A stretch of 64,000 bases of DNA, from positions 2,294,001 through 2,358,000 of the forward strand of contig CATNEN010000029.1 in the NCBI GenBank assembly GCA_950097015.1, in the 5' to 3' direction. Below are positions 19,861-40,234 of the stretch, piece after piece (the first letter of the stretch is position 1; every line of letters begins with the position of its first letter). Both the position numbers and the translations under genes were made by a program. The stretch comes from Macrostomum hystrix. Its lineage: Eukaryota > Animalia > Platyhelminthes. The notes below the pieces were generated by a model, which made no database searches, was not told the origin of the DNA, and worked only from the letters and a program-made list of their open reading frames with translations.

Positions 19861-20387
19861 TTGTGAGATGTTTTTGCGATTTCAATGGGAACACAGAATA
19901 AGGCAGGAAGGTTCTGGGTAAGAAAACGCATTGAATCCTGGGTTCAATTCTCCCCTCGTCGATACTGTAGCACACTTGAGAACCCTGAAGAATTTCGGAA
20001 ACACGTTGACGTTTCTTTAACAAATGAGCAAGTGGCACTGCAGTTATTGTTGGCTAAAAGCGGTTCCCTGTCCCGGATTTGAAGTTTTGACAGCCAAACA
20101 GGGGGGGTTGGTTCTGCAAACCTTGTAAAATATGCCAACGAATGAATGAATTCAGTGCAGTTATAACTGCTAGTCCATCTAAAATTTTAAACCATTGTCT
20201 ATCTTTGAAGTACATTACATATACTTTGAAGGCGTCGCATTGTGTGCATATTTAGGATGATTGAGGACTGAAAATACAGCCAAACAGAAAGGAGCCCTTG
20301 CCTCATCAAAACAGGCGCGAAATATTCAAGTATAAATGAAGTAAAAGCTTACCACCTTGACTTTGAAGCCAAATATGCTTGCTAACT

Positions 20388-21035
20388 CACCTCAGACCAC
20401 GCCATCTCACCTGACACCACACTATCTCACCTGACACCACACTATCTCATCTGACACCACACTATCTCACCTGACACCACACTATCTCACCTGACACCAC
20501 ACTATCTCACCTGACACCACACTATCTCACCTGACACCACACTATCTCACCTGACACCACACTATCTCACCTGACACCACAATATCTCACCTGAGAACAC
20601 ACTATCTCACCTGAGAACACACCATCTCACCTGAGACCACAATATCTCACCTAAGAACACACTATCTCACCTGAGAACCCACTATCTCACCTGAGAACAC
20701 ACCATCTCACCTGACACCACACTAACTCACCTGAGAACACACTATCTCACCTGAGAACACACTATCTCACCTGAGACCACACTATCTCACCTGAGAACAC
20801 AGTATCTCACCTGAGACCACACTATCTCACCTGAGAACACACTATCTCACCTGAGACCACACTATCTCACCTGAGAACACAGTATCTCACCTGAGACCAC
20901 ACTATCTCACCTGAGAACACACTATCTCACCTGAGAACACACTATCTCACCTGAGACCACACTATCTCACCTGAGAACACACTATCTCACCTGAGAACAC
21001 ACTATCTCACCTGAGACCACAATATCTCACCTGAG
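20388..21035. repeat. 20-bp minisatellite (CACACTATCTCACCTGAGAM)
   Basis: About 32 units. Confidence 0.96.
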
Positions 21036-21689
21036 GCTATCCCACCCTATTATCGTCTAAGTCTATCTTATCCCATTTGAGAGACGGCATATTTCCCAAG
21101 ACATTAGCGAATAATAAGCTCTAAGCGGAGAACTCCAAGTGGAATCCCTATTCCGATATCTCAAACGAACCGAGCAAAACGCCGAGACCGCTGGCAGTAT
21201 TTTTTCAGCGTCATCAAATTGGATTTGAGCTGTGGAAACTAAGCAAGCGGAAGGAAGACGAGCGACCAGACATGCGGTGGAGTCGAACAAGATAATAACC
21301 CCTTTCATCTGGCAGGCAAATCGAGGTCCAAGCTCGATGGATATCAAAGAATTCGCCGACTTCATACTAATTTGTCAAGAACTAGCTCTAAATGGAAAGC
21401 GAAAAGCTGATTATGCCTTAGGGAGGCTAAGCCCAAAGCCCTCTCTAAAAGCGAATTCGAACTGACGACCTAAAAGGAGGTTATTTGACAGATTCGTTCA
21501 AATCAACTTTGTGTGAAAAGCTTTCATGAAAGCGTAGCTCGCCTCGAGACCATTAAACGCAGCCTCGGACATTCTAACCATAGACTATGATGAATTAAAC
21601 GGCGTTTATCATATATGAAATTCGATTGCTTATTTTCGGGGCATCCCATCTGATTGATAGACATATAGGTTAAGACCATTTGATTCCGA

Positions 21690-22014
21690 CCATAGACAAA
21701 AAAATAAATTTCTCACGAAGATACAGTCACGAAGCAGCCAGTCAGTCAGTGGTGGCAAAACGTAAAAGCCGAATTCAAAGTTCACTTTAATGTTCCATAT
21801 AATGCTCCTTATTTCGAGGATATTATATGATATAATATCCTAGTTTTTGTCAAATAATCTCATCAAAAATTACCATAGACAACACATTCCCGGCTCAGAA
21901 TAGTACAATTTTTAACGATTAAATAAGCAATCGTATTTTATGTAACGGTGAAACTGAGAATTCGCTGCTCTGATTTCGTGAATTTTCTACGAGTACATTG
22001 CTTTTTGTCTATGG
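21690..22014. mobile_element. Possible MITE with CCATAGACAAAAA terminal inverted repeats
   Basis: 13-bp inverted match (21690 vs 22002-22014); extra CCATAGAC at 21873; no clear target-site duplication. Confidence 0.35.
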
Positions 22015-23426
22015 CCAAATCATATTTTCAATTGAGTGTTTTTTCCCACAAAATCACAAAACATAAACATCGTCAAGATATTCAACGGCTCTCGTCGGGG
22101 TACCTGTTAGCAAAAGCCACCAATTTTTATGCTAATAAAATTGCATCACGTGACCATATCGGCTATCTACTGAGCAATGTTAGTTGTCATTGTCACCAGG
22201 GCAAAGTAGGCAGTGGGAAATACCCGTCTTGCTCGATCACACAAATTGTTTCCTTCGGGCTGAGTTTGCCAGCTGTCACTCACATTGTGGGCAGAATTTA
22301 ATTGATTATAGCATAGAAAAGTCTAGAACTAGAAGAGTTTAGGGTGCATACGCACGGATTTTGAACGATTCACAAACAGCGATAGCCATTCTATTCATCC
22401 AGTCTTTTTAATGGCAATATTGAAACCCTCAGAAGCTTAATCCCTTAGTGACTAAAATCAGAACCCTGCTGATCTACAAATCCTTCCTCTGTAGATTTCA
22501 AAGGAACTAGGGACCGCACTGGCCGAAATTAAAAGCCTCATTTGACTTTCAGTTCTCTTGTGCAAGAAACTACTGAGTGTTTAATCTTAATCCTCGTCCT
22601 CTCTAAAAATATCTGACGCAGGCGAAAACTGTAAATAGTATTTACGGTGCTTCTGTATCGACAGGATTAATTCCACACTTGATAAACTCATAGACCTTAA
22701 TTTAAACTTTATTTTCAGAATACTCAATCTTGGGATTCTTTTTCTACTCTTTGGTAGCCCAAATAGGTACCAGCATTAACTGGAGAAGAAATTGAGTAGT
22801 TTTAGACTTTCCAGTCCATGGACTGAACAGTTGTTACACAGCCTTGGGAAAAACTTTACTGGCTGCACACCTGGCTTAACTAGATTTTCTGTCACTCCGG
22901 GTGCTTTTGAAAGAGCAATGAGGGCATTACAGCATGAGGAAATTGAGTCGACAGCAGGAAATTGGACAGCGACAGAAAGCAACAGTAGCTAATAAGTCGC
23001 ACTTTTTCACATCACAAGGTCAGCGGGTGTCGAACCCGGGACTTCACCGGCCAGAAGTGGAGCCAATAGAGGAAATCAGTAAATTAAAAAGAAGCTCAAT
23101 CTGAGGTAGTTGTTGCCTAATTAAAACAGACGCACCAGGCAGACAAAAATATGCTAAGCTGCCACAGTGAAGGCTGGTGGCTATAAACAACCACCTGAAG
23201 AAAGTGTAGGTGTATTTGAGGATGTAGCTGAAAAACAGCTGGGCAATAGTAGGGAAAGTAAAAAAGAAGTAGAACAAATTGCCTAGGAAGCATTTTAGCT
23301 TCGGTGCAAATGCACTTCAAAAGTGAATATTATAAAACAAGTAAACAACGGGAGAAAAACTGGAAAACAAATATAATAAGTAAATATATAAAGCATGTTA
23401 ATCAATTAGTGAATTTCGATATCTCA

Positions 23427-26400
23427 CTACCGGCCCACCACCTGTTCGAAGCTGATGTCAAATAGGGACGGCGATTCTCCATCGAATGCAAAGTTGTTAG
23501 CAGAAGCGACTGGGCCTTGCGCGTTTAAGCGTCGATCCTCATCGTCGGGCTCGTCCAGCAGCTGGGCAATGGTAGCAGAAGAAGGTTTTGTTCAAGAAGT
23601 GTTTTCCATGTTTTTCCATCATTCTAAACACTATCTAGGGATTTTGGGATTATATGCATGCAATTAATGCAATCGAGCTGAGAATGCATATTTTTTAGTA
23701 GTCAGACAGAACCGACACAAGAATAATATGAGAGCGGGGCAGAAATTTAGAAGAGAAAAGTAGAAAAGTATGCAATACGGCTTCATCTCTCTCGCCAGCG
23801 AAGCGAAAAGAACAAGTTTTAAGAATAAGAAGTAGCGGATGAAGGCGACCAGCTGCCTGACTGGGCAGGCGGTGGGGCTGTGTGAGAGAAATAAATTGAA
23901 GAGCCGAGGCCAAAACAGGGGCTAAGGCCGCGAGCGAGGAACAGGGCACTTTTCTTTATTCCATCCTTCTTGTGTCTTGAGAGCAGAGGGAGCCAAGGCT
24001 GTTTGCAAAGCGTTTGAAAACTAAAGAGGGCCAATATGTAGTAAAGTCTATTTGGATGGCATCTAAAGCGACGAATTGGCTATTGAAATCTGTTGCAAAT
24101 CTGGCTACCCACTATACAGCCAAGCCGTCTAGAGCCTAGACGACTATTAGCGGGAAAAATGCAATGCAGTTAGATGATGAATCACTATAACAGATGATGA
24201 AGAAGAAGCGAGAATGACAAATTAAACGCAGCCAGGAGGGAGAGAAAGAGATAGAGGCAGTGCGCACGATAAAGCGTCACACAAAGTATAGGGTAAAGCA
24301 ATATAAATATTTTAAGCATAGAAAATTAGTCTTATCAAAGAAGCTAGCTAATCAATCTGGGAATGGCGGGAACTAGATAAAAAAAGCGGAGATTGTTTCG
24401 AAACCCATCAAGACAAACTCCTCTTTGAAGCTAAAGTCGAAGCTGTCTTTCTATCTATCTCTCTGTCGCCCCCTTCTCTGTGAGTTCTCAATCATACTCA
24501 CAGTCTACGCCTCTTTTCGATACATATCGGCTAGGACGGGTGCAAGGTGCAACTATATTTATTTTTAGCGACTAAAAATAATCGGTAAAGAACATGCCTA
24601 GCAGATGAGACTAGAGTTGCTCTCTAGATAGTTAGTTAGGTGCACATTACTTCGCCTTGAAGTTGTACAGGAACATGCAGTAAAAATATCCCTTAATCTT
24701 CATAAATAAGTAAATTGCTAAGACTGGCCAAACGCTACGAGGGAATGAAATGCTTGCTCATTCCGGATCTACATAATTATATTGGCTGGCCTGAACGCGG
24801 AACACGCTGAATCGAATAATGTTTAGCACTTGTTATAAGCTGCGCTTCACTGAGCTGGCATTCAATTCACTACACCAGCTCACACAATGGAAACAGCTGA
24901 TTGAGTCACTGAGCCGGCATTCACTACACCAGCTCACACAATGGAAACAGCTGATTGAGTCACAGAGCCGGCATTCACTACACCAGCTCACACAATGGAA
25001 ACAGCTGATTGAGTCACTGAGCCGGCATTCACTACACCAGCTCACACAATGGAAACAGCTGATTGAGTCACTGAGCCGGCATTCACTACACCAGCTCACA
25101 CAATGGAAACAGCTGATTGAGTCACTGAGCTGGCATTCACTACACCAGCTCACACAATGGAAACAGCTGATTGAGTCACTGAGCCGGCATTCACTACACC
25201 AGCTCACACAATGGAAACAGCTGATTGAGTCACTGAGCCGGCATTCACTACACCAGCTCACACAATGGAAACAGCTGATCGAGTCACTGAGCCGGCATTC
25301 ACTACACCAGCTCACACAATGGAAACAGCTGATCGAGTCACTGAGCCGGCATTCACTACACCAGCTCACACAATGGAAACAGCTGATTGAGTCACTGAGC
25401 CGGCATTCACTACACCAGCTCACACAATGGAAACAGCTGATCGAGTCACAGAGCTGGCATTCAATTCACTACACCAGCTCACACAATGGAAACAGCTGAT
25501 CGAGTCACAGAGCTGGCATTCACTACACCAGCTCACACAATGGAAACAGCTGATCGAGTCACAGAGCTGGCATTCAATTCACTACACCAGCTCACACAAT
25601 GGAAACAGCTGATCGAGTCACAGAGCTGGCATTCAATTCACTACACCAGCTCACACAATGGAAACAGCTGATCGAGTCACAGAGCTGGCATTAAATTCAC
25701 TACACCAGCACACACAATGGAAACAGCTGATTGAGTCACAGAGCTGGCATTCAATTCACTACACCAGCTCACACAATGGAAACAGCTGATCGAGTCACAG
25801 AGCTGGCATTCAATTCACTACACCAGCTCACACAATGGAAACAGCTGATTGAGTCACTGAGCTGGCATTCAGTTCACTACACCAGCTCACACAATGGAAA
25901 CAGCTGATCGAGTCACAGAGCTGGCATTCAATTCACTACACCAGCTCACACAATGGAAACAGCTGATTGAGTCACTGAGCTGGCATTCAGTTCACTACAC
26001 CAGCTCACACAATGGAAACAGCTGATCGAGTCACAGAGCTGGCATTCAATTCACTACACCAGCTCACACAATGGAAACAGCTGATCGAGTCACAGAGCTG
26101 GCATTCAATTCACTACACCAGCTCACACAATGGAAACAGCTGATCGAGTCACAGAGCTGGCATTCAATTCACTACACCAGCTCACACAATGGAAACAGCT
26201 GATCGAGTCACAGAGCTGGCATTAAATTCACTACACCAGCACACACAATGGAAACAGCTGATCGAGTCACAGAGCTGGCATTCAATTCACTACACCAGCT
26301 CACACAATGGAAACAGCTGATCGAGTCACAGAGCTGGCATTCAATTCACTACACCAGCTCACACAATGGAAACAGCTGATCGAGTCACAGAGCTGGCATT

Positions 26401-29400
26401 CAATTCACTACACCAGCTCACACAATGGAAACAGCTGATCGAGTCACAGAGCTGGCATTCAATTCACTACACCAGCTCACGCAATGGAAACAGCTGATCG
26501 AGTCACAGAGCTGGCATTCAATTCACTACACCAGCACACACAATGGAAACAGCTGATCGAGTCACTAAGCCGGCATTCACTACACCAGCTCACACAATGG
26601 AAACAGCTGATCGAGTCACAGAGCTGGCATTCAATTCACTACACCAGCTCACACAATGTAAACAGCTGATCGAGTCACAGAGCTGGCATTCAATTCACTA
26701 CACCAGCTCACACAATGGAAACAGCTGATTGAGTCACTGAGCTGGCATTCAGTTCACTACACCAGCTCACACAATGGAAACAGCTGATTGAGTCACTGAG
26801 CCGGCATTCACTACACCAGCTCACACAATGGAAACAGCTGATTGAGTCACTGAGCCGGCATTCACTACACCAGCACACAATGGAAACAGCTGATCGAGTC
26901 ACTGAGCCGGCATTCACTACACCAGCTCACACAATGGAAACAGCTGATTGAGTCACTGAGCCGGCATTCACTACACCAGCTCACACAATGGAAACAGCTG
27001 ATTGAGTCACAGAGCCGGCATTCACTACACCAGCTCACACAATGGAAACAGCTGATTGAGTCACAGAGCCGGCATTCACTACACCAGCTCACACAATGGA
27101 AACAGCTGATTGAGTCACTGAGCCGGCATTCACTACACCAGCTCACACAATGGAAACAGCTGATTGAGTCACTGAGCCGGCATTCACTACACCAGCTCAC
27201 ACAATGGAAACAGCTGATTGAGTCACTGAGCCGGCATTCACTACACCAGCTTACATAATGAAAACAGCTGATTGAGTCACTGAGCCGGCATTCACTACAC
27301 CAGCTCACACAATGAAAACAGCTGATTGAGTCACTGAGCTGGCATTCAATTCACTACACCAGCTCACACAATGAAAACAGCTGATTGAGTCACTGAGCTG
27401 GCATTCAATTCACTACACCAGCACACACAATGGAAACAGCTGATTGAGTCACTGAGCCGGCATTCACTACACCAGCTCACACAATGAAAACAGCTGATTG
27501 AGTCACTGAGCCGGCATTCACTACACCAGCTCACACAATGAAAACAGCTGATTGAGTCACTGAGCTGGCATTCAATTCACTACACCAGCTCACACAATGG
27601 AAACAGCTGATTGAGTCACTGAGCCGGCATTCACTACACCAGCACACACAATGGAAACAGCTGATCGAGTCATTGAGCCGGCATTCAATTCACTACACCA
27701 GCTCACACAATGGAAACAGCTGATTGAGTCACTGAGCTGTCTTTGTACTTAATAATTGACTAGTTTGTTTGAAATTTGTTTGAAATTGCAACTGAATGAT
27801 ATGCTGGTAAGTGTATACTAGCATAATTTCTTGATCATTTTTATGACTTCCTTATGTCTGCCAGAAATAGAGAAAGGGAAATGAAAAAAAGTGAAATTAT
27901 GGTGTGAATTTTCAGTTATATACTTTGACGTTAATGGGATACTTGAAGTACACAAATTATTTCAAGAATTTGGTTATTATTGGATATTGAAATCTCGATG
28001 CTCACAAATTAACTAAGACAAGATTAAACTACAGTAGAGAATTAAGTGACTTAAGAAGGAAGAAGTGCTGGCTAGTAAAGCACTAGCAGCGAAAGACTCA
28101 CTTCGGACAGAGCGTCGCGGATAGTCGGCGTTCTGCTTTGGCGACCAACGCGCAAGTTAGATTTGCGCTGCGTGGGTGTCGGCTGCGGCGGCTGCGACTG
28201 CGATAGCCTACTGGCGCCCTGCTGGTCTGCAAAGTGAAATGCGAAAGCTGACATACTTTGTACTTCAATCCAAACCACCAGGGGATGATTAGCAGAGCGG
28301 TCTAACGCGTCTACCTCTCGCACCAAGGTCCCTGAGCTCAATTCCGCGCCGAGGCCACATTGTACTCTAGTTTGGATTATTAACAGTACAAAGGCCACAC
28401 TATTTCCCTCTTGGGTCTTACGATAGCTCCAAAACCGAAAGTAACCGAAACCGAAACTAACTTTCAAAGCCGTCCGATTTCAGCATCGTTGAAATATAGC
28501 TTTTGTCAGGCTATCTCAGCCTATGGGCATTCAAACTCAGCCAGATAGCAGATAGCATGGCATGGTCTTAAAATGCATGTCTATGGTAAAAATGTGCAGC
28601 TTCAGTAAAAAAACCGCAGTGACAAGATGGGCTGGCTGAGTTTGAATGCCCATAGGCTGAGATAGCCTGACAAAAGCTATATTAAGCGATTCTTGTCGAA
28701 GACCCTCGTGACAAGGACAACTAGCATTGCTCTGTGTAAACCTCTGTGGTGAATCCATATGGTTCAGTACTTTAATATATAATTGACAATATAACCAATA
28801 CAATATAGTCAACAATACGAAGTAATAGCCGACATGGTTTCATGATAGAATTGTTGAATGTCTCGACGATGCCGATGTTTTGTGATTCTGGTAGCTGTTT
28901 CATCGAATAGAGCGTAAAAAATCTTAGCTTCCGTGTTATTTCTACAGTTAATACAAAACATCAACTTGTCATTTAGTCGCAAACTAGTCCAGAATCTAGT
29001 CTACACCTTCTGTGCGGTAGTCAGCAATTACCACTAATTACCATTGAGCCAGTATAATTATCAGCCTAATATACCTTTTTACGTTCTTTTTATATATATC
29101 TTTTTATTTGATAAAAACTGCAACCAATTTGGCCACGGCTCAGCCTGACGCAGCCGCAGCAATTTTCCATAGACAGCCGCCGCTAGCAGCAACCAATTTG
29201 GTAAATCAGTTAATAATTGATTACACCTGCCCCAATTTGGTCAGATGTGCAGTCGACAGCACAGCCGCAGCTAGTTCAGTCCATGGACTGGGGAGACGCC
29301 ACACCCACCTTCAATTATCCCAGCTAATGCTGGTACGCATTTAACAGCTGGGTGAACTGAAGCAATGCAGAGTTAGGTTTCTTGCTTAAGGACAAAAATT

Positions 29401-32400
29401 ATTCCAGTGGAGTCGGGAATCGAACCCCCGACCTTCAAGTCGTGAGTTCGACGCCGTAACCACAATGCTGCAACCTCTAATAGGCCTTTTTTGTCTATTA
29501 CTGAGTCAAATTCGTAAAAAAATAAATAATCCCATAATCTCGGTAGGTGTTCATTACCTTTTATACCTTAGATTAGATTAGTTTTTAGATTTATAGGCAA
29601 GCAATATAGCAGCATTAGAAGATTGTTAAAATTCTCTGACAAAAAGAAAATTTATGACCCGGCAATTGAAAAAAATATCAATGCCTGGCCTCAAAGCAAT
29701 CATATAAAAAATTATGCCAGGTGCGATAATGGAGGCAAAAATTATCTTAACTCACCGTCGCAAATTTCAAACACTGTGCTCTGCTGGGTTGAATTTGCCG
29801 CAAAATTTGCCACTGCAATCTGCTTCATCACTGCGAGTCGAAGAGGAAAATGTGAGGATAGAAAATGTAAAGAAATCATAATTCATCTGATTTCATGACA
29901 GCATGAAAGCTCAGATTATTTTTCCAATACTAAATTTGTTTTTCAAAAGTTCCGGTTAAGCGTTAGAAAAATTAGAAAGAATTAGAAAGAATACGAAATA
30001 ACAGATAAACAGCTGACTTGTAATTTCATTCACTGACCGATTGAGCATACACACAACTGCAAGAAAATAACACGCGTTCTTCTTAGCGACGTATCTAATG
30101 TCGAAATCTTGACGTTGATGTTGATCTTGATGTCCTAATTGTAGTGTCATGTGTCCGAATTCAAATATAGTGTCGATTAAGAAGGGAAAACATTTGAGAA
30201 AATATGAATATCATTTGTAAAAACTCGGATTTACTGTAGCTTAATTAGGATTTTCTGAGTGCTAATTAAGTTTTTATGAGTCTTGATGGAACCCGGAATG
30301 ACAGAAGATTTTCTGTGATTCTACAAGGACTAACATTGTTTTAATAAGAATAAAATATTAGAAGAAAATTATATTGACTGATATAACACAGTCCAAACCA
30401 CACTCGATAAACAGTCCAAAACACACTCGATAAACAGCCTGAAATACACTCGATAAACAGCCCGAAATACACTAAATAAACAGCCCGAAACACACTCGAT
30501 AAACAGTCCATAACACACTCGATAAACAGCCTGAAATACACTCGATAAACAGCCGGAAATACACTCGATAAACAGCCCGAAATACACTAGATAAACAGCC
30601 CGAAACACACTCGATAAACAGTCCAAAACACACTCGATAAACAGCCTGAGATAAACGGCCTGAAATATACTCGATAAACAGTCCAAAACACACTCGATAA
30701 ACAGCCCGAAATACATTCGATAAACAGCCTGAAACACACTCGATAAACAGCCTGAAATATACTCGATAAAGAGTCCGAAACACGCTCGATAAACTGCCTG
30801 AAATACACTCGATAAACAGTCCAAAACACACTCGATATACAGCCCGAAATACATTCGATAAACAGCCTGAAACACACTCGATAAACAGCCTGAAATATAC
30901 TCGATAAAGAGTCCGAAACACGCTCGATAAACTGCCTGAAATACACTCGATAAACAGTCCAAAACACACTCGATATACAGCCCGAAATACATTCGATAAA
31001 CAGCCTGAAACACACTCGATAAACAGCCTGAAATATACCGATAAAGAGTCCGAAACACACTCGATAAACATCCCGAAATACACTCGAAAAACTGCCTGAG
31101 ACACAATCGATAAATCCTGAGCCTGAAAAACTAAAAAAACCGCCCGAAACAAAGTACACGAAGCAATTTGTGTAAGAAAGAATCTTGCTTGTTGGCCAAG
31201 CGCTTATGAAGGCTTAAACGATTAATACAGTTAAGCTTGGTAAAAAAGCGCAAAAATTGGTCTTCAGCAACAATGGTTGCCTAAAAGATTAATGTGCCCC
31301 GCACAATTGATGAGCAACTACTGTAAGAGTTTGAGCTGCTCACCACTCAAGCTTGGGGTGTTCAAGTGCTTGGTGTGAAGTCGAAGTGCAGTCAAGACAA
31401 ACAGCACAAAGAGGTTTTTATATGACTCCTAATTAGGATTTACTTATAATATCCTATTTGGTAACTGTCTTGTTGAATACTTTTGGCACAATTAGACTAT
31501 TTTCTACAGATATCGAGGTAAAATAATTATTAAACAATGACTCACACTGATCCAGCTTAGTGGTAATGGCAGACAGACTATGAGCCTGCTGAGCTTCAAC
31601 AGCCTGAAATCGGCCAACCATGAAGTCCCACAGGTCCTGCACTGTGACTTCGCCCAGCTGCAGCAGGCTAGCCGCAGGCGCAGGCGGTAGTTGGCTATAC
31701 CGCGACCAGCAGTTGTTACCAGCAGCCAGCCGCTGACTGTGGCCGGCGCTCATTGCCGCACTGGCTGGGGTGGCTGTGCGCCCAGAAGTCGCGGCCTGAC
31801 TAAATCGGGGCCGCTTATTAACCGAGTCCTGATTACTATCCAACGCCGGGCCGTACGAATCCCGTGCCAGACGCTTCTGACTCGGTCCTGGCTGCTGGCT
31901 GAGAGCCTGACTAGTATTTGAACGATGTTGTCCTTGGTAACGACTGCTTTGAGTTTGCTCCTGGCTAAAAGCCTGACTGGAACCCGGCTGCTGTTGTTTT
32001 TGTTGGCCCTGGCAACCAACTTTTTGCTTCTTGGCTGCCTGGCTGAATGTCTGACCAACACTGGATTGTGGCTCTACTGATGACTGACCGAAAGCCTGAC
32101 CCGATCTACTAGGCTTCTGTTGTCCTTGACAACGGTTGCTTGGAAGTGTTCTCTGACTCTGACTGAAGCTCGAGATACCATTAGCCAGCGACACTTGACT
32201 ACAGCCTTGGCCAAGATCGGATTCTCTTTGGCGGCCTTGACGACCATCCCGATTTTCTCGCTGGCTAAAGCCCTGACTTGCACTGTCAACGCGCCGGTGT
32301 TGACCTTGGTTACAACTGGCCTTCATTGGTTGCTGACTAAAACCTTGCACTTGGCTAAAATTTTGACTTGACCCAGCAACTGTCTGGCGGCATTGGTAAC

Positions 32401-33636
32401 CATCCTGCGTCGACTTCTGACTAAAGCTTCCGCTGGTCCAAGCAACTGATACGCGTCCTTGGTGACTGTCACTGACCGGCCTTTGACAAAAACTTTCGCC
32501 AGATCGACCGACAGTTTGGCGCCCTTGGAAACTATCGCGATCTATCCACTGGCTAAAGCCGGGATTTGAACCAGCAACCAATCGGCGTCCTTGGTAATTA
32601 TCGTTGCATTGCTCAAATTGTTGAGTGAATATCTGGCTGCGACTAATACCTGATCGGCCCGGCATCTGGTGAGCACCGCCAGGCTGCTGGTGCGGCGGAA
32701 TGAAATCTATAATAATTGAGGAGAACTAAGTCTTGAAATACTACTTTTAGCAGTAGAACTGTCAACACTAAGGCGAAATCGCCCCTGACAATTATTTCTG
32801 CTGCACCCAAACAGAGCAATGCAAGCACACGCAGACGAAACTTTTGCTGAGCATCTTCTGAAAAAGGCACCAGCCCTTCACACTGTCGAGATATTCAATG
32901 CACTGCGGCTTAGTGCGACCTAGGTTGGCCTTCAAACTTTATCAGCACGTCACCCGGATGTGCCTTCATCATTTTCGAACTTTATCTAGAAGGAGCTGCG
33001 GACATTCAACAAGTAGTAGTTTAGTGTAACCCAATATCGAGGCGAGCGAAAGTGGAGAACTTTGCATTAGGCACTTTATGGCCAGCTGAAGGCATCCTGC
33101 TGACGGTGCTGACGGCGTCGGGGTGGTGGCTGATAATTTGACAGACTAGGCGAGGGTCCTGTGGTTGAGCTTTGCCAGCGAAGCTTGATCAGCGAAATGG
33201 GAGAAATTTGCATCAGGGTGTCCATAGTCGGCTGGTGCCACTTGTTGAAGGTCCAGCAGCTCCGTCTAGATAAAGGCGCGTGACTACTGAAGTCGGAGAT
33301 GATGCAGGCACAGTTGGGTGATAAAGTTTGAAAGCCGTGCAAAGCCGCAACTGAGACGCAGTTCGAATTCGTGTATGAAATACAGACCTTCGAAAAGAAC
33401 CGTTGAGTATCTCGACGGTCTGAAGGGCTGGCGACTTAATTCTAGTTTCAGAAGATACGCAGAAAAGTTGTTTCACATTGTAAAAAGCACTCACCACCAG
33501 ATCGTCCAGTTAGTAATGTCGGCTGCGAGCTGTGCCTAGTAAATAGTGGCCGATCACGAAAGTTGTCAAACGCCGGCTGATTATCGTCCCCAGAGCCGCC
33601 AGCAAGTGATCGCCTCTGGCCGGCGTTAAAGCTCAT
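23427..33636 (-). CDS. Tentative orphan gene: ~520-aa Q/S/G-rich protein with FSQ repeats and a short predicted coiled coil
   Basis: Hand-built model complement(join(23427..23561,28102..28226,31546..32706,33495..33636)). ATG at 33636; three GTGAGT donors; acceptors TATAG, TTTGCAG, GCCCAG; phases 1,1,0 all compatible; no internal stop; total 1563 nt. Exon 2 is the 403-aa ORF 31454..32665 trimmed at splice sites. No recognisable domain. Confidence 0.55.
24845..27738. repeat. 54/59-bp satellite (CACTACACCAGCTCACACAATGGAAACAGCTGATYGAGTCACWGAGCYGGCATT[CAATT])
   Basis: About 51 units of two lengths. Confidence 0.97.
28281..28466 (+). mobile_element. tRNA-derived SINE-like element (second family)
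   Basis: A-box-like TAGCAGAGCGG and degenerate B-box GAGCTCAATTCC in tRNA spacing, no complete cloverleaf, short ACCGAAA-repeat tail. Confidence 0.5.
28493..28683. mobile_element. MITE with perfect 52-bp terminal inverted repeats
   Basis: 28493-28544 is the exact reverse complement of 28632-28683; 87-bp spacer; AT-rich ends. Confidence 0.8.
29230..29475 (-). mobile_element. tRNA-derived SINE (palindrome family)
   Basis: tRNA-like head with B-box GGTTCGATTCC (~29410-29475), central segment TGTCCTTAAGCAAGAAACCTAAC...CACCCAGCTGTTAAATG, and palindrome CAGTCCATGGACTG at 29277-29290. Confidence 0.75.
30385..31110. repeat. 23-bp minisatellite (ACACTCGATAAACAGCCYGAAAT)
   Basis: About 30 variable units with a higher-order duplication; a few more units occur at 34918-34985. 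Confidence 0.93.
31142..31361 (+). repeat. 220-bp direct repeat, copy 1 (copy 2 at 34978-35196)
   Basis: Manual alignment shows ~7 differences in 220 bp. Confidence 0.92.
32868..33430. pseudogene. Two convergent decayed copies of an unidentified coding sequence (probably TE-derived) in intron 1 of the orphan gene
   Basis: 32868-33015 (+) aligns with the reverse complement of ~33240-33430; 33120-33300 aligns with 45090-45250; differences fall mainly at third codon positions in one frame. Confidence 0.5.
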
Positions 33637-33894
33637 CGTAAAATAATGTAATACAGCTTTTTTAAAAAGCGGCACCCTAAAAACATAGGCGCTTTTTCAA
33701 GACTCGAAGCGAAAAATTGTTTATTTTTTAGTTCTCCTCGCTGAAAAAAATAAATTGCGATAAATTAAACTGTAATAGTAAGTATCAATTTAGTTACACT
33801 TAATAAACACACAGTTCAAAGAAAATGAGAGTGGGCCGAATGCCGTGTGCTAGTCACATAAATAATGCTAGGGGCTGATAATGGTTTTAGGATT

Positions 33895-34915
33895 GAATAA
33901 TGGTGATAGGGTGGATAATTATGATAGGGCGAATAATAATGATAGGGTGGATAATGGTGATAGGGCGGATAATGGTGATAGGGCGGATAATGGTGACAGG
34001 ATGGATAATAGTGATAGGGTGGATAATGATGATAGGGTGGACAATGATAATAGGGTGAATAATTATGATAGGGTGGATAATGGTGATAGGGTGGATAATA
34101 GTGATAGGGTGGATAATGATAATAGGGTGGATAATGATGATAGGGTGGACAATGATAATAGGGTGGATAATTATGATAGGGCGAATAATAATGATAGGGT
34201 GGATAATGGTGATAGGGTGGATAATGGTGATAGGGTGGATAATAGTGATAGGGTGGATAATGATAATAGGGTGAATAATTATGATAGGGCGAATAATAAT
34301 GATAGGGTGGATAATGGTGATAGGGTGGATAATGGTGATAGGGTGGATAATAGTGATAGGGTGGATAATGATGATAGGGTGGATAATGATAATAGGGTGG
34401 ATAATTATGATAGGGCGAATAATAATGATAGGGTGGATAATGGTGATAGGGTGGATAATGGTGATAGGGTGGATAATAGTGATAGGGTGGATAATGATAA
34501 TAGGGTGAATAATTATGATAGGGCGAATAATAATGATAGGGTGGATAATGGTGATAGGGTGGATAATGGTGATAGGGTGGATAATGGTGATAGGGTGGAT
34601 AATGGTGATAGGGTGGATAATGATGATAGGGTGGACAATGATAATAGGGTGAATAATTATGATAGGGTGGATAATGGTGATAGGGTGAATAATGATGATA
34701 GGGTGGATAATGATGATAGGGTGGATAATGATGATAGGGTGGATAATGGTGATAGGGTGGACAATGATAATAGGGTGAATAATTATGATAGGGTGGATAA
34801 TGGTGATAGGGTGAATAATGATGATAGGGTGGATAATGGTGATAAGGTGGATAATGATGATAGGGTGGATAATGATGATAGGGTAGATAATGATGATAGG
34901 GTAGATAATGATGAC
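33895..34915. repeat. 18-bp minisatellite (GATAGGGTGGATAATGRT)
   Basis: About 56 units with higher-order periodicity. Confidence 0.96.
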
Positions 34916-34977
34916 GAACACTCGATAAACAGCCTGAGATACATTTGATGAACAACCTGAAACAAACGCAATAAACA

Positions 34978-35196
34978 GCCCGAAACACGGTACACGAAGC
35001 AATTTGTGTAAGAAAGAATCTTGCTTGTTGGCCAAGCGCTTATGAAGGCTTAAACGATTAATACAGTTAAGCCTCGTAAAAAGCGCAAAAATTGGTCTTC
35101 AGCAACAATGGTTGCCTAAATGATTAATGTGCCCCGCACAATTGATGAGCAACTACCGTAAGAGTTTGAGCTGCTCACCACTCAAGCTTGGGGTGT
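34978..35196 (+). repeat. 220-bp direct repeat, copy 2
   Basis: Matches 31142-31361. Confidence 0.92.
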
Positions 35197-36324
35197 GGAA
35201 GTGAATTTGCAGCTCAGTGATTAGAGCCCAGGACTACTTGGCCATGTGACCAAGGACCTTGTCCATGGACTTAATATATCTATGCATCTACAAGCCACAT
35301 ACTGTTTTCATTTAAATGAAATGAAACTAATTTGAACAGATTTCAAGCAGGAAAAAACTGTAGTAAAAATATAATTTTTGCATTCATTAGAGCCAGTTTA
35401 ATATCGCCAGATGCGGCACTAGCCAGTCTTGATAGTGAACATTTACCGGGATTAACACTAATACAAACAGTGCAGTTAAGCCTGGATTTAAAACGCAACA
35501 AGCTGAATGCCTACTATTTCAATCCAAAAATTTTACCAGGAATAAACTAATGACCCTCCTCTACATAGCAACTAAACACATAAGCACTTTCAAGCTCAAC
35601 ATTAGCAAGCAACTAATTGAAGCGGGCAGGTTAGTGGGTGCTTGCACGCGTGCGTGATACTGGAAGCCAACTTAGAGCTGACGAGAAAACAGCAGAAGCC
35701 AGAGGGGCTGAGCAGAGAGAACTTGGGAGAACTTTAAATGCTAATAAACATCAGTTGAATTCGCTTAAAAAACTGAAGAGAAAATTTCGGATTTTACCAC
35801 ATAAAAAGGTGACTTCAAAATTGAATAAAAGTACAAAAATAGTTTGCAAACGCAGCAGAATAGAACTCAAACCTCAAAGATGATGGCAACAGGAAACAAA
35901 GGAAATTAAAAGCGACTGTGGAAATGTTCTATGTACAGTTGCACCTATATCTAGCCTCATTTGATTGGGGAAAAAAATAAACCACTATTAATAAATAAAT
36001 ACCGAAAGGAAGTTTGCAAATTTTAACTTCTTAGGAAGAAAATACCAGAGAACAACACAGACAATGTATAGGAACAAGAATGCAATTGGCCTGATTGACT
36101 TTTTCATAAATTAATGTCCCAAGGCTTTGTTCGTCTGTCGCATCTCTTTTTCTCTGAACAAAATTGGTGCACGTAAAGCAGAGTTACAGCGAGTGGACCG
36201 TTACTTTTGTTGCGCTAAATCAGCTAAACAGATTAACGGGTAACAATTAGCGACAATAGGTTTAGTCTGTTTAGTGAAATTGAAAGCAAATAAAAGGACA
36301 AATATATTTGTAAAGAAGGAACAC

Positions 36325-37956
36325 TCATCGACCAACAGCCACAATGTCCATCAGTTCAACATCGCCGGGAGCTGCAGTGGCGCCGACGCCCATAACAACC
36401 ACGGCGGCTGCGGCATCAGTGGGCAGTTGAACTCTCAACGGGCGCACTGGCGGCGAAGCTGGCAGGCACCAGTCCAGCAGCAGCGGACTGGAAGCCGCCT
36501 GACGCCTTCGACAACGATTATCATTGTCATCGGTGTCATCATCAGCGGCTGCTTTCAGCTGCTCGGCAGACGGCTCGGGCGATACCATAGCCAAACCGCG
36601 GCCAACCGTGTGACCAATCGGATCCTCGTCCATGGCCTCCTCGTCATCCGCTTCCGCTTCCTGACGAATCGCGCCATAGAAGGCGCACTCGTTATCGACG
36701 TCTGAATAGTCGTCGGCGTCGTCATCCGACTGACTGGATAACAGAGTCGAAGGCGGCGGCGGCAGGGGGTGACGCAGGCTGCGGTAGGGACTGGGCACCA
36801 GTAGGTCGGGCAGGGGCTGCTGCGCCGGCATCGCCTGGTCAGACGAAGCAGATGTCGCCTCGACGCCGCTTGACGTTGTTGACGACGCTTCGCGTCGGCG
36901 TCGGCCGCTGTGAGCCGCCGGCGGACTAGACGAACGCGAGGAAGAGGTGGCTGCGTTACAGTCCTGACGGCTTCCCAATTGGGGAGGATGCTGAGATCTC
37001 GCGGCCATGAGGCGGCAGGCCAATACAGAGAGAGCCGGCGCGGAGCTGGGGCTCACATACTGATTAGTGATGAGGTGCTCGGCCAAGGCGCGCATAGAGA
37101 CAAACTCTGCGCCGAGAAGTTTCTGTGCCCATTGTACAACCACAGAGTCGTGAAATGTGGCACCGCCGGATCTGCTGCCGCCGCCATTGCTGGCATCGTC
37201 ATCCGAGGAGGTCTGCTGCTGAGCTAGCTGAGCTAGCGAGCCGGGCGGAGGTAACAGGTCGGTTAGGCGAGGCTGCGGCGGACAGGCCTGCTTGCGCAGT
37301 CCGCCATAACAGTATTTCGACTGGCCGCGTTGGCCAAGCCGGCGGGGCTTGACGCCGGGGAAGGCGCGCTTCATCGCCTTGCCAAAGTCGGCCGTGTTTA
37401 AGGGCTTGCAACCGTGCGCCTCGCAGTACTGCTTGTAGTCCGAGTAGACTTCGTCTTTGCGCAGGCACACGCTCGGATCCTCTTCCAGGTGGCTTAGTAT
37501 CCAGGTGTGCGCGTGCGTCTGCTCCGCCTGGTTGCTGAGCTGCGTCAGCTGCTGCTGCTGCTGCTGCTGATTTGGCAGAACTTGATCTATTGGCCTGCCA
37601 CCAGCTGGCAGCTGCAGATAGAGCAACAGCTTCTCAAGGTCAGACAGAGAACGCACCGAATCAAGAATTGCGCAGACTCGCTCACGCGCCTCAGCTGTCA
37701 CATCGGATTCCAGATCGTCACGCAGGGTGTCCATCAGTGGCGTGACATTACGGCTAGACTGGCTGCCGCCGGCGTCTAGTTCAGCAGCAGCTTCACGTTT
37801 GATGACGGCGCCATGCGGGCCAACAGTTGGACTGGTGTTGCGATTCACAGCTTCTACATTGTTATAATTGGCAGTCGAGGATGCTGAAGACGATGATGAA
37901 GGCGCCTTTTGTCTGGCGCTAGGTATTTTATTGTTTGTGTTAGTTTGGCTGACCGG
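36325..37956 (-). CDS. RFX7: RFX-family winged-helix transcription factor, RFX5/RFX7-like
   Basis: RFX DNA-binding domain (HTWILSHLEE...VYSDYKQYC...LNTADFGKAMKRAFPGVKPRRLGQRGQSKYCYGGLRK) preceded by the RFX5/7 N-terminal motif LSDLEKLLLYLQLP. Frame is open up to 37986 without an ATG; likely acceptor TTACAG just before 37956; 5' exon not found. RFX5 vs RFX7 not resolvable by eye. Confidence 0.88.
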   Translation of the reverse strand, partial: PVSQTNTNNKIPSARQKAPSSSSSASSTANYNNVEAVNRNTSPTVGPHGAVIKREAAAELDAGGSQSSRNVTPLMDTLRDDLESDVTAEARERVCAILDSVRSLSDLEKLLLYLQLPAGGRPIDQVLPNQQQQQQQLTQLSNQAEQTHAHTWILSHLEEDPSVCLRKDEVYSDYKQYCEAHGCKPLNTADFGKAMKRAFPGVKPRRLGQRGQSKYCYGGLRKQACPPQPRLTDLLPPPGSLAQLAQQQTSSDDDASNGGGSRSGGATFHDSVVVQWAQKLLGAEFVSMRALAEHLITNQYVSPSSAPALSVLACRLMAARSQHPPQLGSRQDCNAATSSSRSSSPPAAHSGRRRREASSTTSSGVEATSASSDQAMPAQQPLPDLLVPSPYRSLRHPLPPPPSTLLSSQSDDDADDYSDVDNECAFYGAIRQEAEADDEEAMDEDPIGHTVGRGLAMVSPEPSAEQLKAAADDDTDDNDNRCRRRQAASSPLLLDWCLPASPPVRPLRVQLPTDAAAAVVVMGVGATAAPGDVELMDIVAVGR

Positions 37957-40234
37957 CTGTAAGTCATGGCAGTATTTGAATTTAATTCAGAAAGAGCTCG
38001 TGGCTAAACCTAGCAACAGACAGAATCTAACCTTCAGGACATTCTACATTGCTTTGAACTTTTTAATATGTCATTTTAATTAATGACAATAAAAAGTCAC
38101 CTCTTTTGTATGTATGCTGGATGCTGGATGAATTTAAAAGGCTAGATTTGTCTGCCGGCAGACAAAACAACTATTTTGTACAATGATGAGAACTGTAATA
38201 ACATTCTAAAACAATTTTTATAGAAAGTATTTATGATGATTAATGTTTGAATGAACATTTAAACAATTTTGTTTAATAGAATCATTCATATCATTCATTC
38301 AAAGTATTATCATAATTTGAAGCAGTCCTTAAAGAAGGAAATTCTAGTCTTGATGGCTTTACCTTTCATTAATGATTGTTCTAATTGCAATGCTGTTGTA
38401 ACAGCTAAGCAGCATGTCTTTCAGTGTGAAAGATGCAACAAATGCAACCAGATGAAATGTTTTGAAATGGAAATGTTTGGTTCTGGCTTTGTGTATTTAT
38501 AAGCTGCTTATTAGCTACAAAACTTTTAGAAAAATCCTAGCATTTTAACAAAAAAAAATTGTAAGACATTTAGATAATATTTTCATATGAAACTTGATTA
38601 CATACGTGTAATTAGTTATTCTGACTAATGCATATGTTAGCATATAAATGGACTATATCATATATTGGCAAACAAAATGACTATATTGTATATTGGCAGA
38701 TGAAAAGGTGGTAAACAAAAAGGAAGCAGACAAAATGACCATCAACCACTAGAATAGGCCACCACATTGTATATGTATATCTTATTCATGCAAATGCCTA
38801 TATTTTCTCTATATTATTAAAATCAAGGGAGCTAACTTCTAGTCCTGCATAAATTCAAATATTGCTTGACTTAAGAATGTTTAAAATAATATAAAAAACC
38901 TGCTATATTTTCATAAACTTATTTTGTGTTATTTTTGACAGAAATCTAAGTGATAAGTAGGCCTACTGCTAAAAATAACACCTGATTAGAGTTTTTTGCT
39001 CTCCCAAAATTCAACATTCATTCAACACCCTGCTTAATATGCTTACTAGATTTGTTTTATTCTGCTTGCTTGATTCTTCAATGTAAAATAGCTTAATTGA
39101 CATGGGAAACCAGGATAAGGCAAAGTGTATAGGCCCTAACCCCTATGCCTATAAATTAAATTTGTTGTTTCAATAAAGGGAGTAAGGTCCATCTATTAAA
39201 TTAATTAAACGATTATGACGAGGCAAAATGCCGCAAATCTCTTGTCTGTGTAACTGTAACACAGTAACACTGTTTTTGTGCTTCGCCACAAACTGATGGC
39301 GAAACAAAACGAGCTTACATAAATAGGGCATATAAAACAGTATTCATGCATACACTTTATATCTAGATAATCAATATCGATTGGATAAATTTACAATCGA
39401 GTAAAGGCGAGCCTATATCATCAAGCTAGCATCAAACAAAGCACCGTAGCGAGTCACGACCGACCAATCGACGAGGTTAGAAGAAAAAAATATATATTTT
39501 AAAAAATGTACGTCCATTATAACGAACTGTTACAAGAAGTAAAATTGCAAAAAATGTGCAGCAAAAAACACAAAATAATTAAATATATTACGCATGACTG
39601 TATTTTTTCTTTTCTTATTAAACAGAAGAATGATATTTAAAATATTTAAAACACCACTATTATAAGAAACCATTGGGTCTTATCAATGATTAACGTAGAG
39701 GTGGTAGTACGAGTACTACTAGTTAGCATTTACGATATACATCAATATGAACTATTGCTAGACAGCGGAGACGTTCAGAACAGGGCCTAAAACGGCATGT
39801 CTAGCCGCCACGTTTTTTAGGTATTTTTTCCTCCAAATTGTAAAACATAGTGGTCATTAAAATATTTTCAAGTCGCGCTTTATTGCTCTTTATGTGTTAA
39901 AGCTTAGCTAAGCAGAACTTTCGAATTTTCATATAAACGAACACATATTAGATTTTTTGCAGCTCCGTTTTTATATAATCGAATTAGTAAGCCTAATAGA
40001 CATAAAATTAGAATATGCTCGACACACTGATGTATCTGCAACTCTGTAACAACTACTTTGGCATGGCATAATAGACTAATCTATTTTTATATTCATGTTA
40101 TTTTTGTCTAGGCCAATAAATCTTAATTGACTAATTTCACTGTACTTTTTAATAGCTCAATAACTAATTTCGTTTTTAACTTTTTTAGGCTCAAAAGTAG
40201 GAACAAGTAGTACAGTACTAGTATTGGCTGGCTT

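What the first reader, a model, noticed from the sequence alone, without database searches (positions are those of the whole stretch)
23427..33636. Hidden 10-kb four-exon orphan gene encoding an FSQ-repeat (SQ-cluster) protein
Seen: four GC-rich segments separated by satellites, SINEs and a MITE join with strong splice sites and perfect phase compatibility into a 520-aa ORF. It reads MSFNAGQRRSL...; then a degenerate ~22-aa repeat (QGR....GSSQxFSQ; 9 exact FSQ plus variants); then VTVQDLWDFMVGRFQAVEAQQAHSLSAITTKLDQ; then ...TIRDALSE|LLDEPDDEDRR...SLFDISFEQVVGR*. Known: SQ/TQ clusters are ATM/ATR phosphorylation sites. Inference: SQ-rich disordered N-terminus + coiled coil + acidic/aromatic tail recalls, from memory and unverified, the fast-evolving meiotic Mer2/IHO1/PRD3 scaffold family; a germ-granule-type disordered protein is an alternative. 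The ORF track shows only exon 2.
Basis: partly seen in the sequence, partly recalled or inferred. Interest (0 to 1): 0.75.

Follow-up and report, generated by a model that had tools for sequence, protein, structure and literature searches.

The report
Flatworm FSQ-repeat disordered protein gene

Summary
The gene is real. All four proposed minus-strand exons, their splice sites and their phases check out. Exon 2 matches a transcript-derived Macrostomum lignano hypothetical protein, Mlig023463 (E 2e-37; pairwise 5e-51). That protein is collinear with every exon.

The corrected model has five coding exons and 545 codons by arithmetic; I never joined the exons.

The gene is single copy in its 220-Mb genome. 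Its introns carry satellites and dispersed repeats.

The protein has six parts:
- a conserved N-terminal peptide;
- about 14 basic Q/S/G-rich units of about 22 aa, each ending in aromatic-S-Q (FSQ 9 observed, 0.5 expected);
- one confident helix of about 50 aa;
- a basic patch;
- a short motif identical in both species;
- an acidic/aromatic tail.

No relative exists outside Macrostomum in 1.84 billion representative proteins, Pfam, PDB sequences or the ESM Atlas.

The Mer2/IHO1 idea stays open and weak. The Phe-3, helix, basic-patch and "LLCD"-plus-acidic-patch layout fits. However, the helix is three to four times too short, no profile matches, and 19% of shuffles reach the C-terminal similarity score.

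My best reading is a lineage-restricted nuclear scaffold with multivalent candidate ATM/ATR sites. Interest is modest.

The parts
33495..33636 (-). Coding exon 1 (142 nt). The ATG is at 33636-33634. It encodes the conserved N-terminal peptide with Phe at position 3 and the motifs PAFD and RDRPLF.RHSSQP. The donor GTGAGT starts at 33494.
   Evidence: 24 of 41 residues are identical to the N-terminus of M. lignano P0001.
31546..32706 (-). Coding exon 2 (1161 nt, phase 1 in and out). The acceptor is ttattatAG and the donor is GTGAGT.
   Evidence: E 2e-37 to P0001; BLASTP 5e-51, 40% identity. Single copy in the genome.
31715..32704 (-). FSQ-repeat region (exon-2 residues 1-330). It holds about 14 units, typically about 22 aa apart, each ending in [F/Y/L]-[S/G/C/N]-Q. 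It is Q/S/G-rich, has net charge +20 and carries 21 aromatic residues. It is predicted disordered.
   Evidence: motif statistics, spacing, charge. (pLDDT below 50 for residues 1-350). No DNA-level tandem repeat here by TRF.
31547..31642 (-). First two thirds of the conserved helix (exon-2 residues 355-386). The helix runs off the end of the exon.
   Evidence: helix 355-385, pLDDT 77-89. (P0001 helix 312-362, pLDDT about 91). 43 of 54 identical to P0001.
29756..29830 (-). It encodes the last third of the helix and the run ANSTQQSTVFE.
   Evidence: acceptor AG, donor GTGAGT. (collinear with P0001 residues 345-370).
28102..28226 (-). Coding exon (125 nt). It encodes a basic patch (RKSNLR...R) and the first ten residues (TPTIRDALSE) of the motif TPTIRDALSELL, which is identical in M. 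lignano; the final LL lies in the next exon.
   Evidence: P0001 short helix 411-421.
23427..23561 (-). Last coding exon (132 nt plus the TAG stop). It encodes an acidic patch (LLDEPDDED) and the conserved terminal motif ESPSLFD.SF. Net charge is -7.
24847..27739 (.). 59-bp satellite, 51 copies, inside the last intron.
30383..31114 (.). 23/46-bp satellite inside the intron between exon 2 and the missed exon.
32899..33470 (.). Dispersed element of about 570 bp filling most of intron 1. It matches in both orientations, so it is foldback or MITE-like.
   Evidence: 163 matches, 1652 first-look candidates, 70-82% identity.
29211..29478 (.). Dispersed SINE-like element of about 270 bp in the intron between the missed exon and the next exon.
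   Evidence: 6167 first-look candidates, 81-88% identity.

Best explanation
**Shown.** This is a single-copy protein-coding gene of a Macrostomum-type flatworm with five coding exons on the minus strand (545 codons by arithmetic). It is the orthologue of the transcript-derived M. lignano gene Mlig023463.

**Anatomy (shown).** The parts, in order, are:
- a conserved N-terminal peptide;
- about 330 disordered, basic, Q/S/G-rich residues holding about 14 units that each end in aromatic-Ser-Gln;
- one conserved amphipathic helix of about 50 residues;
- a basic K/R patch, plus a KRPR or KRGR motif further up;
- the motif TPTIRDALSELL, identical in both species;
- an acidic tail ending in ESPSLFD.SF.

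**Mechanism (inferred).** I read it as a genus-restricted nuclear scaffold or adaptor.
- The helix mediates self-association or partner binding.
- The conserved terminal peptides act as short docking motifs.
- The FSQ array provides multivalency. It may act as clustered substrate sites for ATM/ATR-type kinases, since a hydrophobic residue before SQ is their preferred context (my own knowledge). It may also act as aromatic 'stickers' in a basic spacer that favour condensation on nucleic acid.

Selection appears to act on the motif and not on the unit sequence. Unit number and spacers differ between the two species, while aromatic-S-Q persists.
For: - **Gene model:**
- **Orthology across all five exons:**
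- **M. lignano models come from a genome-guided transcriptome assembly:**
- **Single copy:**
- **Exon GC 0.45-0.64 against intron GC 0.37-0.47:**
- **Motif statistics:** FSQ 9 against 0.5, SQ 20 against 10.5, QS 4 against 10.4, and up to 10 S/TQ per 100 aa. The same bias is seen in P0001.
- **No DNA tandem repeat in exon 2:**
- **Disorder plus one confident helix in both species:**
- **Charge layout:** +20 in the repeats, +5 in the basic patch, -7 in the tail.
- **Mosaic conservation:** helix 43/54, N-terminus 24/41, repeats 107/323 with many gaps.
Against: - I found no expression, localisation or phosphorylation data for either species. Supplement look-ups in four M. lignano papers found no mention of the gene, and at least one held table is cut.
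- The loose SCD definition is met by more than 25% of yeast proteins, so it is weak evidence of kinase targeting.
- Nuclear localisation rests only on short basic motifs.
- The heptad pattern of the helix is weak, 9 of 18 core positions, so oligomerisation is a guess.
Confidence: 0.5

Rival explanations
1. It is the highly diverged flatworm member of the Mer2/IHO1/PRD3 family. On this reading the N-terminal peptide (Phe-3) docks on REC114 and the helix tetramerises. The basic patch binds DNA. The short conserved motif plus acidic patch binds the HORMA-domain axis protein. The FSQ array is a lineage-specific expansion that lets ATM/ATR tune double-strand-break formation.
For: - The order of parts matches the family scheme of SSM1, helix, disordered region, then SSM2 overlapping an acidic patch.
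- Phe at position 3 is conserved in both flatworms, and mouse IHO1 F3E abolishes REC114 binding.
- 'LLCD' followed by an acidic run parallels the mouse C-terminus NLLCDPDFDSSDDNF.
- The Arabidopsis acidic patch also lies 45 aa from the C-end.
- Yeast Mer2 likewise has an essential basic motif in its C-terminal disordered region.
- The genome has SPO11 and HORMA genes, yet no Pfam-detectable IHO1, REC114 or MEI4 anywhere. These fast-evolving partners are therefore invisible to profiles here.
Against: - There is no Pfam IHO1 or Mer2 match to any exon, to P0001 or P0003, or to this locus in the genome.
- The helix is about 50 aa and sits in the last third of the protein. Family members have central coiled coils of 150-220 aa.
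- The C-terminal similarity score is reached by 19% of shuffles.
- No IHO1 sequence was available through the tools for a real alignment.
- Expression is unknown.
Confidence: 0.2
2. It is a cytoplasmic germ-granule or other condensate protein, in which aromatic stickers in a basic Q/S/G spacer drive phase separation with RNA.
For: Composition and periodic aromatic residues: 21 F/W/Y and net +20 over 330 disordered residues.
Against: - The protein lacks the usual RGG/RG boxes, Tudor, LOTUS and helicase modules.
- K-R-x-R type basic motifs suggest a nuclear location.
- The asymmetry of SQ over QS (20 against 4) points to a specific motif and not to mere composition.
Confidence: 0.1
3. It is a transcriptional co-activator, with a Q-rich region and a C-terminal acidic/aromatic activation motif, recruited to DNA-bound partners through the helix.
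For: 17% Gln in exon 2, and an acidic tail carrying F residues.
Against: - No DNA-binding or known co-activator domain was found.
- Nothing explains the strict aromatic-S-Q periodicity.
Confidence: 0.1
4. It is not a functional gene. It would be a chance ORF, a transposon-derived sequence or a pseudogene.
For: The introns are full of repeats. No canonical AATAAA lies within about 530 nt after the stop.
Against: - It is single copy.
- There are five open exons with consensus splice sites.
- It is collinear with a transcript-derived orthologue, and the conservation is mosaic, as expected under selection.
Confidence: 0.03

Closest known systems
Macrostomum lignano hypothetical protein Mlig023463 (copies g1, g3, g4; PAA59311.1, PAA75194.1, PAA58941.1; UniProt A0A267ECI5, A0A1I8GNI3)
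   Same: It is collinear over all five coding exons. It shares the same N-terminal peptide, FSQ units, helix (43 of 54 identical), basic patch, TPTIRDALSELL motif and ESPSLFD.SF end.
   Different: - It is 458 aa against 545 codons.
- It has fewer FSQ units (6 exact against 9), and the spacers are largely unalignable.
- It has 'LLCD' where the window has 'LLDE'.
- M. lignano carries several near-identical copies (polyploid genome), while this genome has one.
Mer2 / IHO1 / Rec15 / PRD3 / PAIR1 family (meiotic DSB-machinery scaffold)
   Same: Both are mostly disordered. Both have a conserved extreme N-terminal peptide with Phe-3 and a conserved helix. Both have a basic patch in the C-terminal disordered part and a short conserved motif overlapped by an acidic patch near the C-end.
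   Different: - There is no profile match.
- The helix is about 50 aa and not central, against coiled coils of 150-220 aa.
- A 330-aa FSQ array separates the N-terminal peptide from the helix.
- A further 30-35 residues and a second aromatic/acidic motif follow the acidic patch.
- The sequence similarity is not above chance.
S/T-Q cluster domains (SCDs) of ATM/ATR (Tel1/Mec1) substrates
   Same: The density far exceeds both the loose definition (3 per 100 aa) and the strict one (3 per 50 aa). Up to 10 S/TQ fall in 100 aa.
   Different: - Known SCDs are short patches next to folded domains.
- This is a periodic array with a near-invariant aromatic residue before SQ.
- Phosphorylation is untested.
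FG-nucleoporin-like or prion-like 'sticker and spacer' disordered regions
   Same: Regularly spaced aromatic residues sit in an uncharged or basic Q/S/G-rich spacer.
   Different: The motif is F-S-Q and not FG, GLFG or FxFG. There is no nucleoporin anchor domain and no sequence relationship.

Membership tests
Mlig023463 orthogroup (Macrostomum-restricted hypothetical protein) | Significant, collinear similarity over the full length | tested here: met
   E 2e-37 and 5e-51. Every exon aligns in order.
Mer2/IHO1/PRD3 | Match to the family profiles (Pfam PF15771 IHO1, PF09074 Mer2) | tested here: not met
   There is no hit for any exon, for P0001 or for P0003, even at E up to 10. PF15771 hits nothing in the whole genome. 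PF09074 gives only weak hits, and these lie on a translated tandem repeat elsewhere.
Mer2/IHO1/PRD3 | Central coiled coil of about 150-220 residues forming a parallel tetramer | tested here: not met
   AlphaFold2 gives one helix of about 51 residues at 68-79% of the length, with a weak heptad pattern. The oligomeric state could not be tested.
Mer2/IHO1/PRD3 | N-terminal SSM1 that binds the REC114 PH domain (Phe-3 in mouse) | tested here: inconclusive
   Phe-3 and a conserved 40-aa N-terminal peptide are present in both flatworms. No IHO1 N-terminal sequence could be obtained through the tools for alignment.
Mer2/IHO1/PRD3 | C-terminal SSM2 overlapped by an acidic patch that binds the HORMA-domain axis protein | tested here: inconclusive
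   A conserved 12-aa motif followed by an acidic run is present. Its similarity to the mouse 15-mer is reached by 288 of 1500 shuffles.
Mer2/IHO1/PRD3 | Meiotic expression and a requirement for DSB formation | not testable with these tools
   I found no expression data.
S/T-Q cluster domain proteins | At least 3 S/T-Q within 100 aa (strict definition: within 50 aa) | tested here: met
   Exon 2 holds 23 S/TQ, with up to 10 per 100 aa. SQ is enriched over shuffles, p 0.0004.
S/T-Q cluster domain proteins | Phosphorylation by ATM/ATR-type kinases | not testable with these tools
   This needs phosphoproteomics.
Transposable element or dispersed repeat | Many dispersed copies | tested here: not met
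   Exon 2 has exactly one match in the 220-Mb genome. Only intron segments are repeated.

The most novel reading that the evidence does not exclude
The gene is the long-missing flatworm counterpart of Mer2/IHO1. On this reading it has been remodelled: the tetramerising coiled coil is shrunk to about 50 residues, and about 14 FSQ units sit between the REC114-docking N-terminus and the helix. That would put ATM/ATR feedback on meiotic break formation directly on the scaffold itself.
Probability: 0.2. Interest if true: 0.65.

Novelty: new member of a known kind. Interest (0 to 1): 0.35.

Why it matters
The result corrects and validates a gene model that a prokaryote-style ORF track cannot see. 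It also shows that the FSQ-repeat protein is a conserved, genus-restricted family and not a one-off.

Such fast-evolving disordered proteins are where the unrecognised meiotic break-machinery scaffolds (Mer2/IHO1, REC114, MEI4) of many invertebrates must hide. This genome has SPO11 and HORMA genes, but no profile-detectable copy of any of the three.

If this protein proves to be one of them, Macrostomum, which is transgenic and RNAi-tractable, would offer a test bed for how the break machinery evolves. If not, it is an ordinary lineage-specific disordered protein.

Tried and rejected
- **Exhaustive phmmer.** P0001 against 1.84 billion representatives found only M. lignano.
- **Word-index searches.** Exon 2 and P0001 residues 285-458 gave the same result.
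- **Pfam.** Searches at E up to 10 on all exons, P0001 and P0003 gave only two or three chance hits.
- **PDB sequences.** Nothing was found.
- **ESM Atlas.** Neither the whole protein nor the C-terminal part gave a usable hit.
- **Rfam over 20000-38000.** Nothing was found.
- **Genome-wide Pfam searches.** IHO1, REC114-like and Mei4 found nothing. The Mer2 model hit only a translated tandem repeat.
- **Finding Mlig023463 in the literature.** I searched paper texts and the supplements of four M. lignano papers and found nothing. At least one held table is cut.
- **Confirming the mouse IHO1 N-terminal sequence from the literature.** It is not printed anywhere searchable. I therefore used only 'F3' and made no alignment.
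- **Fold searches.** I did not run them, because both models are one helix in a disordered chain (mean pLDDT 47 and 36).
- **Spliced protein.** I never assembled it. All searches were exon by exon or used the natural M. lignano protein.
- **Third word-index search.** I left it unused, as the exhaustive search had already answered the question.
- **Human contamination.** The contig is not human.
Full report
**1. Observation**

Their boundaries are as follows.
- Exon 1 starts at the ATG at 33636 and ends at 33495, before GTGAGT.
- Exon 2 (32706-31546) follows ttattatAG and ends before GTGAGT.
- The next exon (28226-28102) follows tttgcAG and ends before GTGAGT.
- The last exon (23561-23427) follows ttgcccAG and ends in TAG.

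The lengths 142, 1161, 125 and 135 nt give phases 1, 1 and 0, hence 520 codons by arithmetic. Every search used single exons by reference or the natural M. lignano protein.

**2. Orthologue and corrected model**

Exon 2 alone finds two Macrostomum lignano hypothetical proteins: P0001 (458 aa, E 2e-37) and P0002 (368 aa). The pairwise BLASTP result is 5e-51 at 40% identity. The cluster holds copies Mlig023463 g1, g3 and g4. These models come from a genome-guided transcriptome assembly built from RNA-seq, so their exon joins rest on RNA.

P0001 is collinear with exon 1 (24 of 41 identical), the end of exon 2 (43 of 54), exon 3 and exon 4. It also carries about 26 residues between the exon-2 and exon-3 equivalents. 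The window encodes these at 29830-29756. This is a 75-nt exon with an AG acceptor and, like the other three donors, GTGAGT, in phase 1 on both sides.

The gene therefore has five coding exons (1638 nt, 545 codons). The missed exon encodes the last third of the conserved helix.

**3. Not a repeat**

Exon 2 occurs once in the 220-Mb, 42-contig genome. The introns do carry repeats:
- a 59-bp satellite and a 23/46-bp satellite;
- a dispersed foldback-like element of about 570 bp in intron 1;
- a SINE-like element of about 270 bp.

Exons have GC 0.45-0.64 and introns 0.37-0.47. The organism is a Macrostomum-type flatworm and is not human.

**4. Anatomy of the protein**

AlphaFold2 on P0001 gives one confident helix (312-362, pLDDT about 91) and a short helix (411-421). 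Everything else scores below 50. The window's own exon 2 is disordered for 350 residues and then helical to the exon end.

In exon 2:
- SQ occurs 20 times (10.5 expected, p 0.0004).
- QS occurs 4 times (10.4 expected).
- FSQ occurs 9 times (0.5 expected).

The same bias holds in P0001.

Motifs of the form [F/Y/L]-[S/G/C/N]-Q recur typically about 22 residues apart, 14 times in all. Up to 10 S/TQ fall within 100 aa. The array has net charge +20, the following basic patch +5 and the tail -7. TRF sees no DNA-level repeat in exon 2. The two species differ in unit number and spacer sequence but keep the motif. This suggests selection on the motif itself.

**5. Relatives**

I found none outside Macrostomum:
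- exhaustive phmmer over 1.84 billion representatives;
- two word-index searches;
- Pfam;
- PDB sequences;
- ESM Atlas.

**6. Test of the Mer2/IHO1 idea**

The literature defines the family by four features:
- an N-terminal SSM1;
- a central coiled coil of 150-220 aa that forms a parallel tetramer;
- disordered flanks;
- a C-terminal SSM2 overlapped by an acidic patch that binds the HORMA-domain protein.

In mouse, the first 23 residues bind the REC114 PH domain, and F3E abolishes that binding.

The flatworm proteins share the order of parts. They have Phe-3 and a basic patch. They also have a short conserved motif followed by an acidic run, 'LLCD...' in M. lignano against the mouse C-terminus NLLCDPDFDSSDDNF.

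Three results count against membership:
- The profiles PF15771 and PF09074 match nothing here.
- The helix is three to four times too short and lies in the last third of the protein.
- The similarity score of the 15-mer is reached by 288 of 1500 shuffles.

The genome has SPO11 and HORMA genes. IHO1, REC114 and MEI4 profiles all find nothing, so a missing profile hit is weak evidence of absence. I put kinship at about 0.2.

**7. Mechanism**

The best-supported reading is a genus-restricted nuclear scaffold. On this reading:
- the helix serves self-association or partner binding;
- the conserved termini act as docking peptides;
- the FSQ array gives multivalency, as clustered ATM/ATR-type sites, as aromatic stickers, or as both.

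A hydrophobic residue before SQ is the preferred ATM/ATR context; that statement is my own knowledge and is not a tool result. The loose SCD definition is met by more than 25% of yeast proteins, so only the density and the strict motif are notable. The gene and its anatomy are shown. Localisation, phosphorylation and oligomerisation are inferred.

**8. Limits**

- I found no expression data.
- No IHO1 sequence could be obtained through the tools.
- I made no joined protein.

Noticed in passing
window 36325-37848 (-): The upstream neighbour on the same strand is an open frame of 507 aa. It has an RFX DNA-binding domain (E 1.9e-26) and an RFX5 N-terminal domain.
   Followed up: partly
window 33897-34914: An 18-bp satellite of about 57 copies lies about 260 bp upstream of the gene's start codon. 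It gives long spurious ORFs on both strands.
   Followed up: no
window 33740-33750 (-): A T-rich tract ending in AG (tttttttcAG) lies about 105 nt upstream of the ATG. It could be a spliced-leader trans-splice acceptor or a 5'-UTR intron acceptor. Trans-splicing is common in M. lignano.
   Followed up: no
window 22900-23426 (-): No AATAAA or ATTAAA occurs within about 530 nt downstream of the stop codon. The polyadenylation signal is unknown.
   Followed up: no
window 13681-14409 (+): An open frame shows weak rhodopsin-type / Srw-type 7TM receptor similarity (E 2.6e-08).
   Followed up: no
G000:C29:6740763-6741527 (L002, L003): Weak Pfam Mer2 hits (E 0.016 and 0.04) fall on a translated tandem repeat. 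They are not a Mer2 candidate.
   Followed up: yes
G000:C25:1757709-1760287 and G000:C11:3349532-3351051: Two loci have HORMA-domain matches above the Pfam cut-off. SPO11 TP6A_N matches at G000:C29:3774477-3774590. I did not work out which HORMA gene is the meiotic one.
   Followed up: partly
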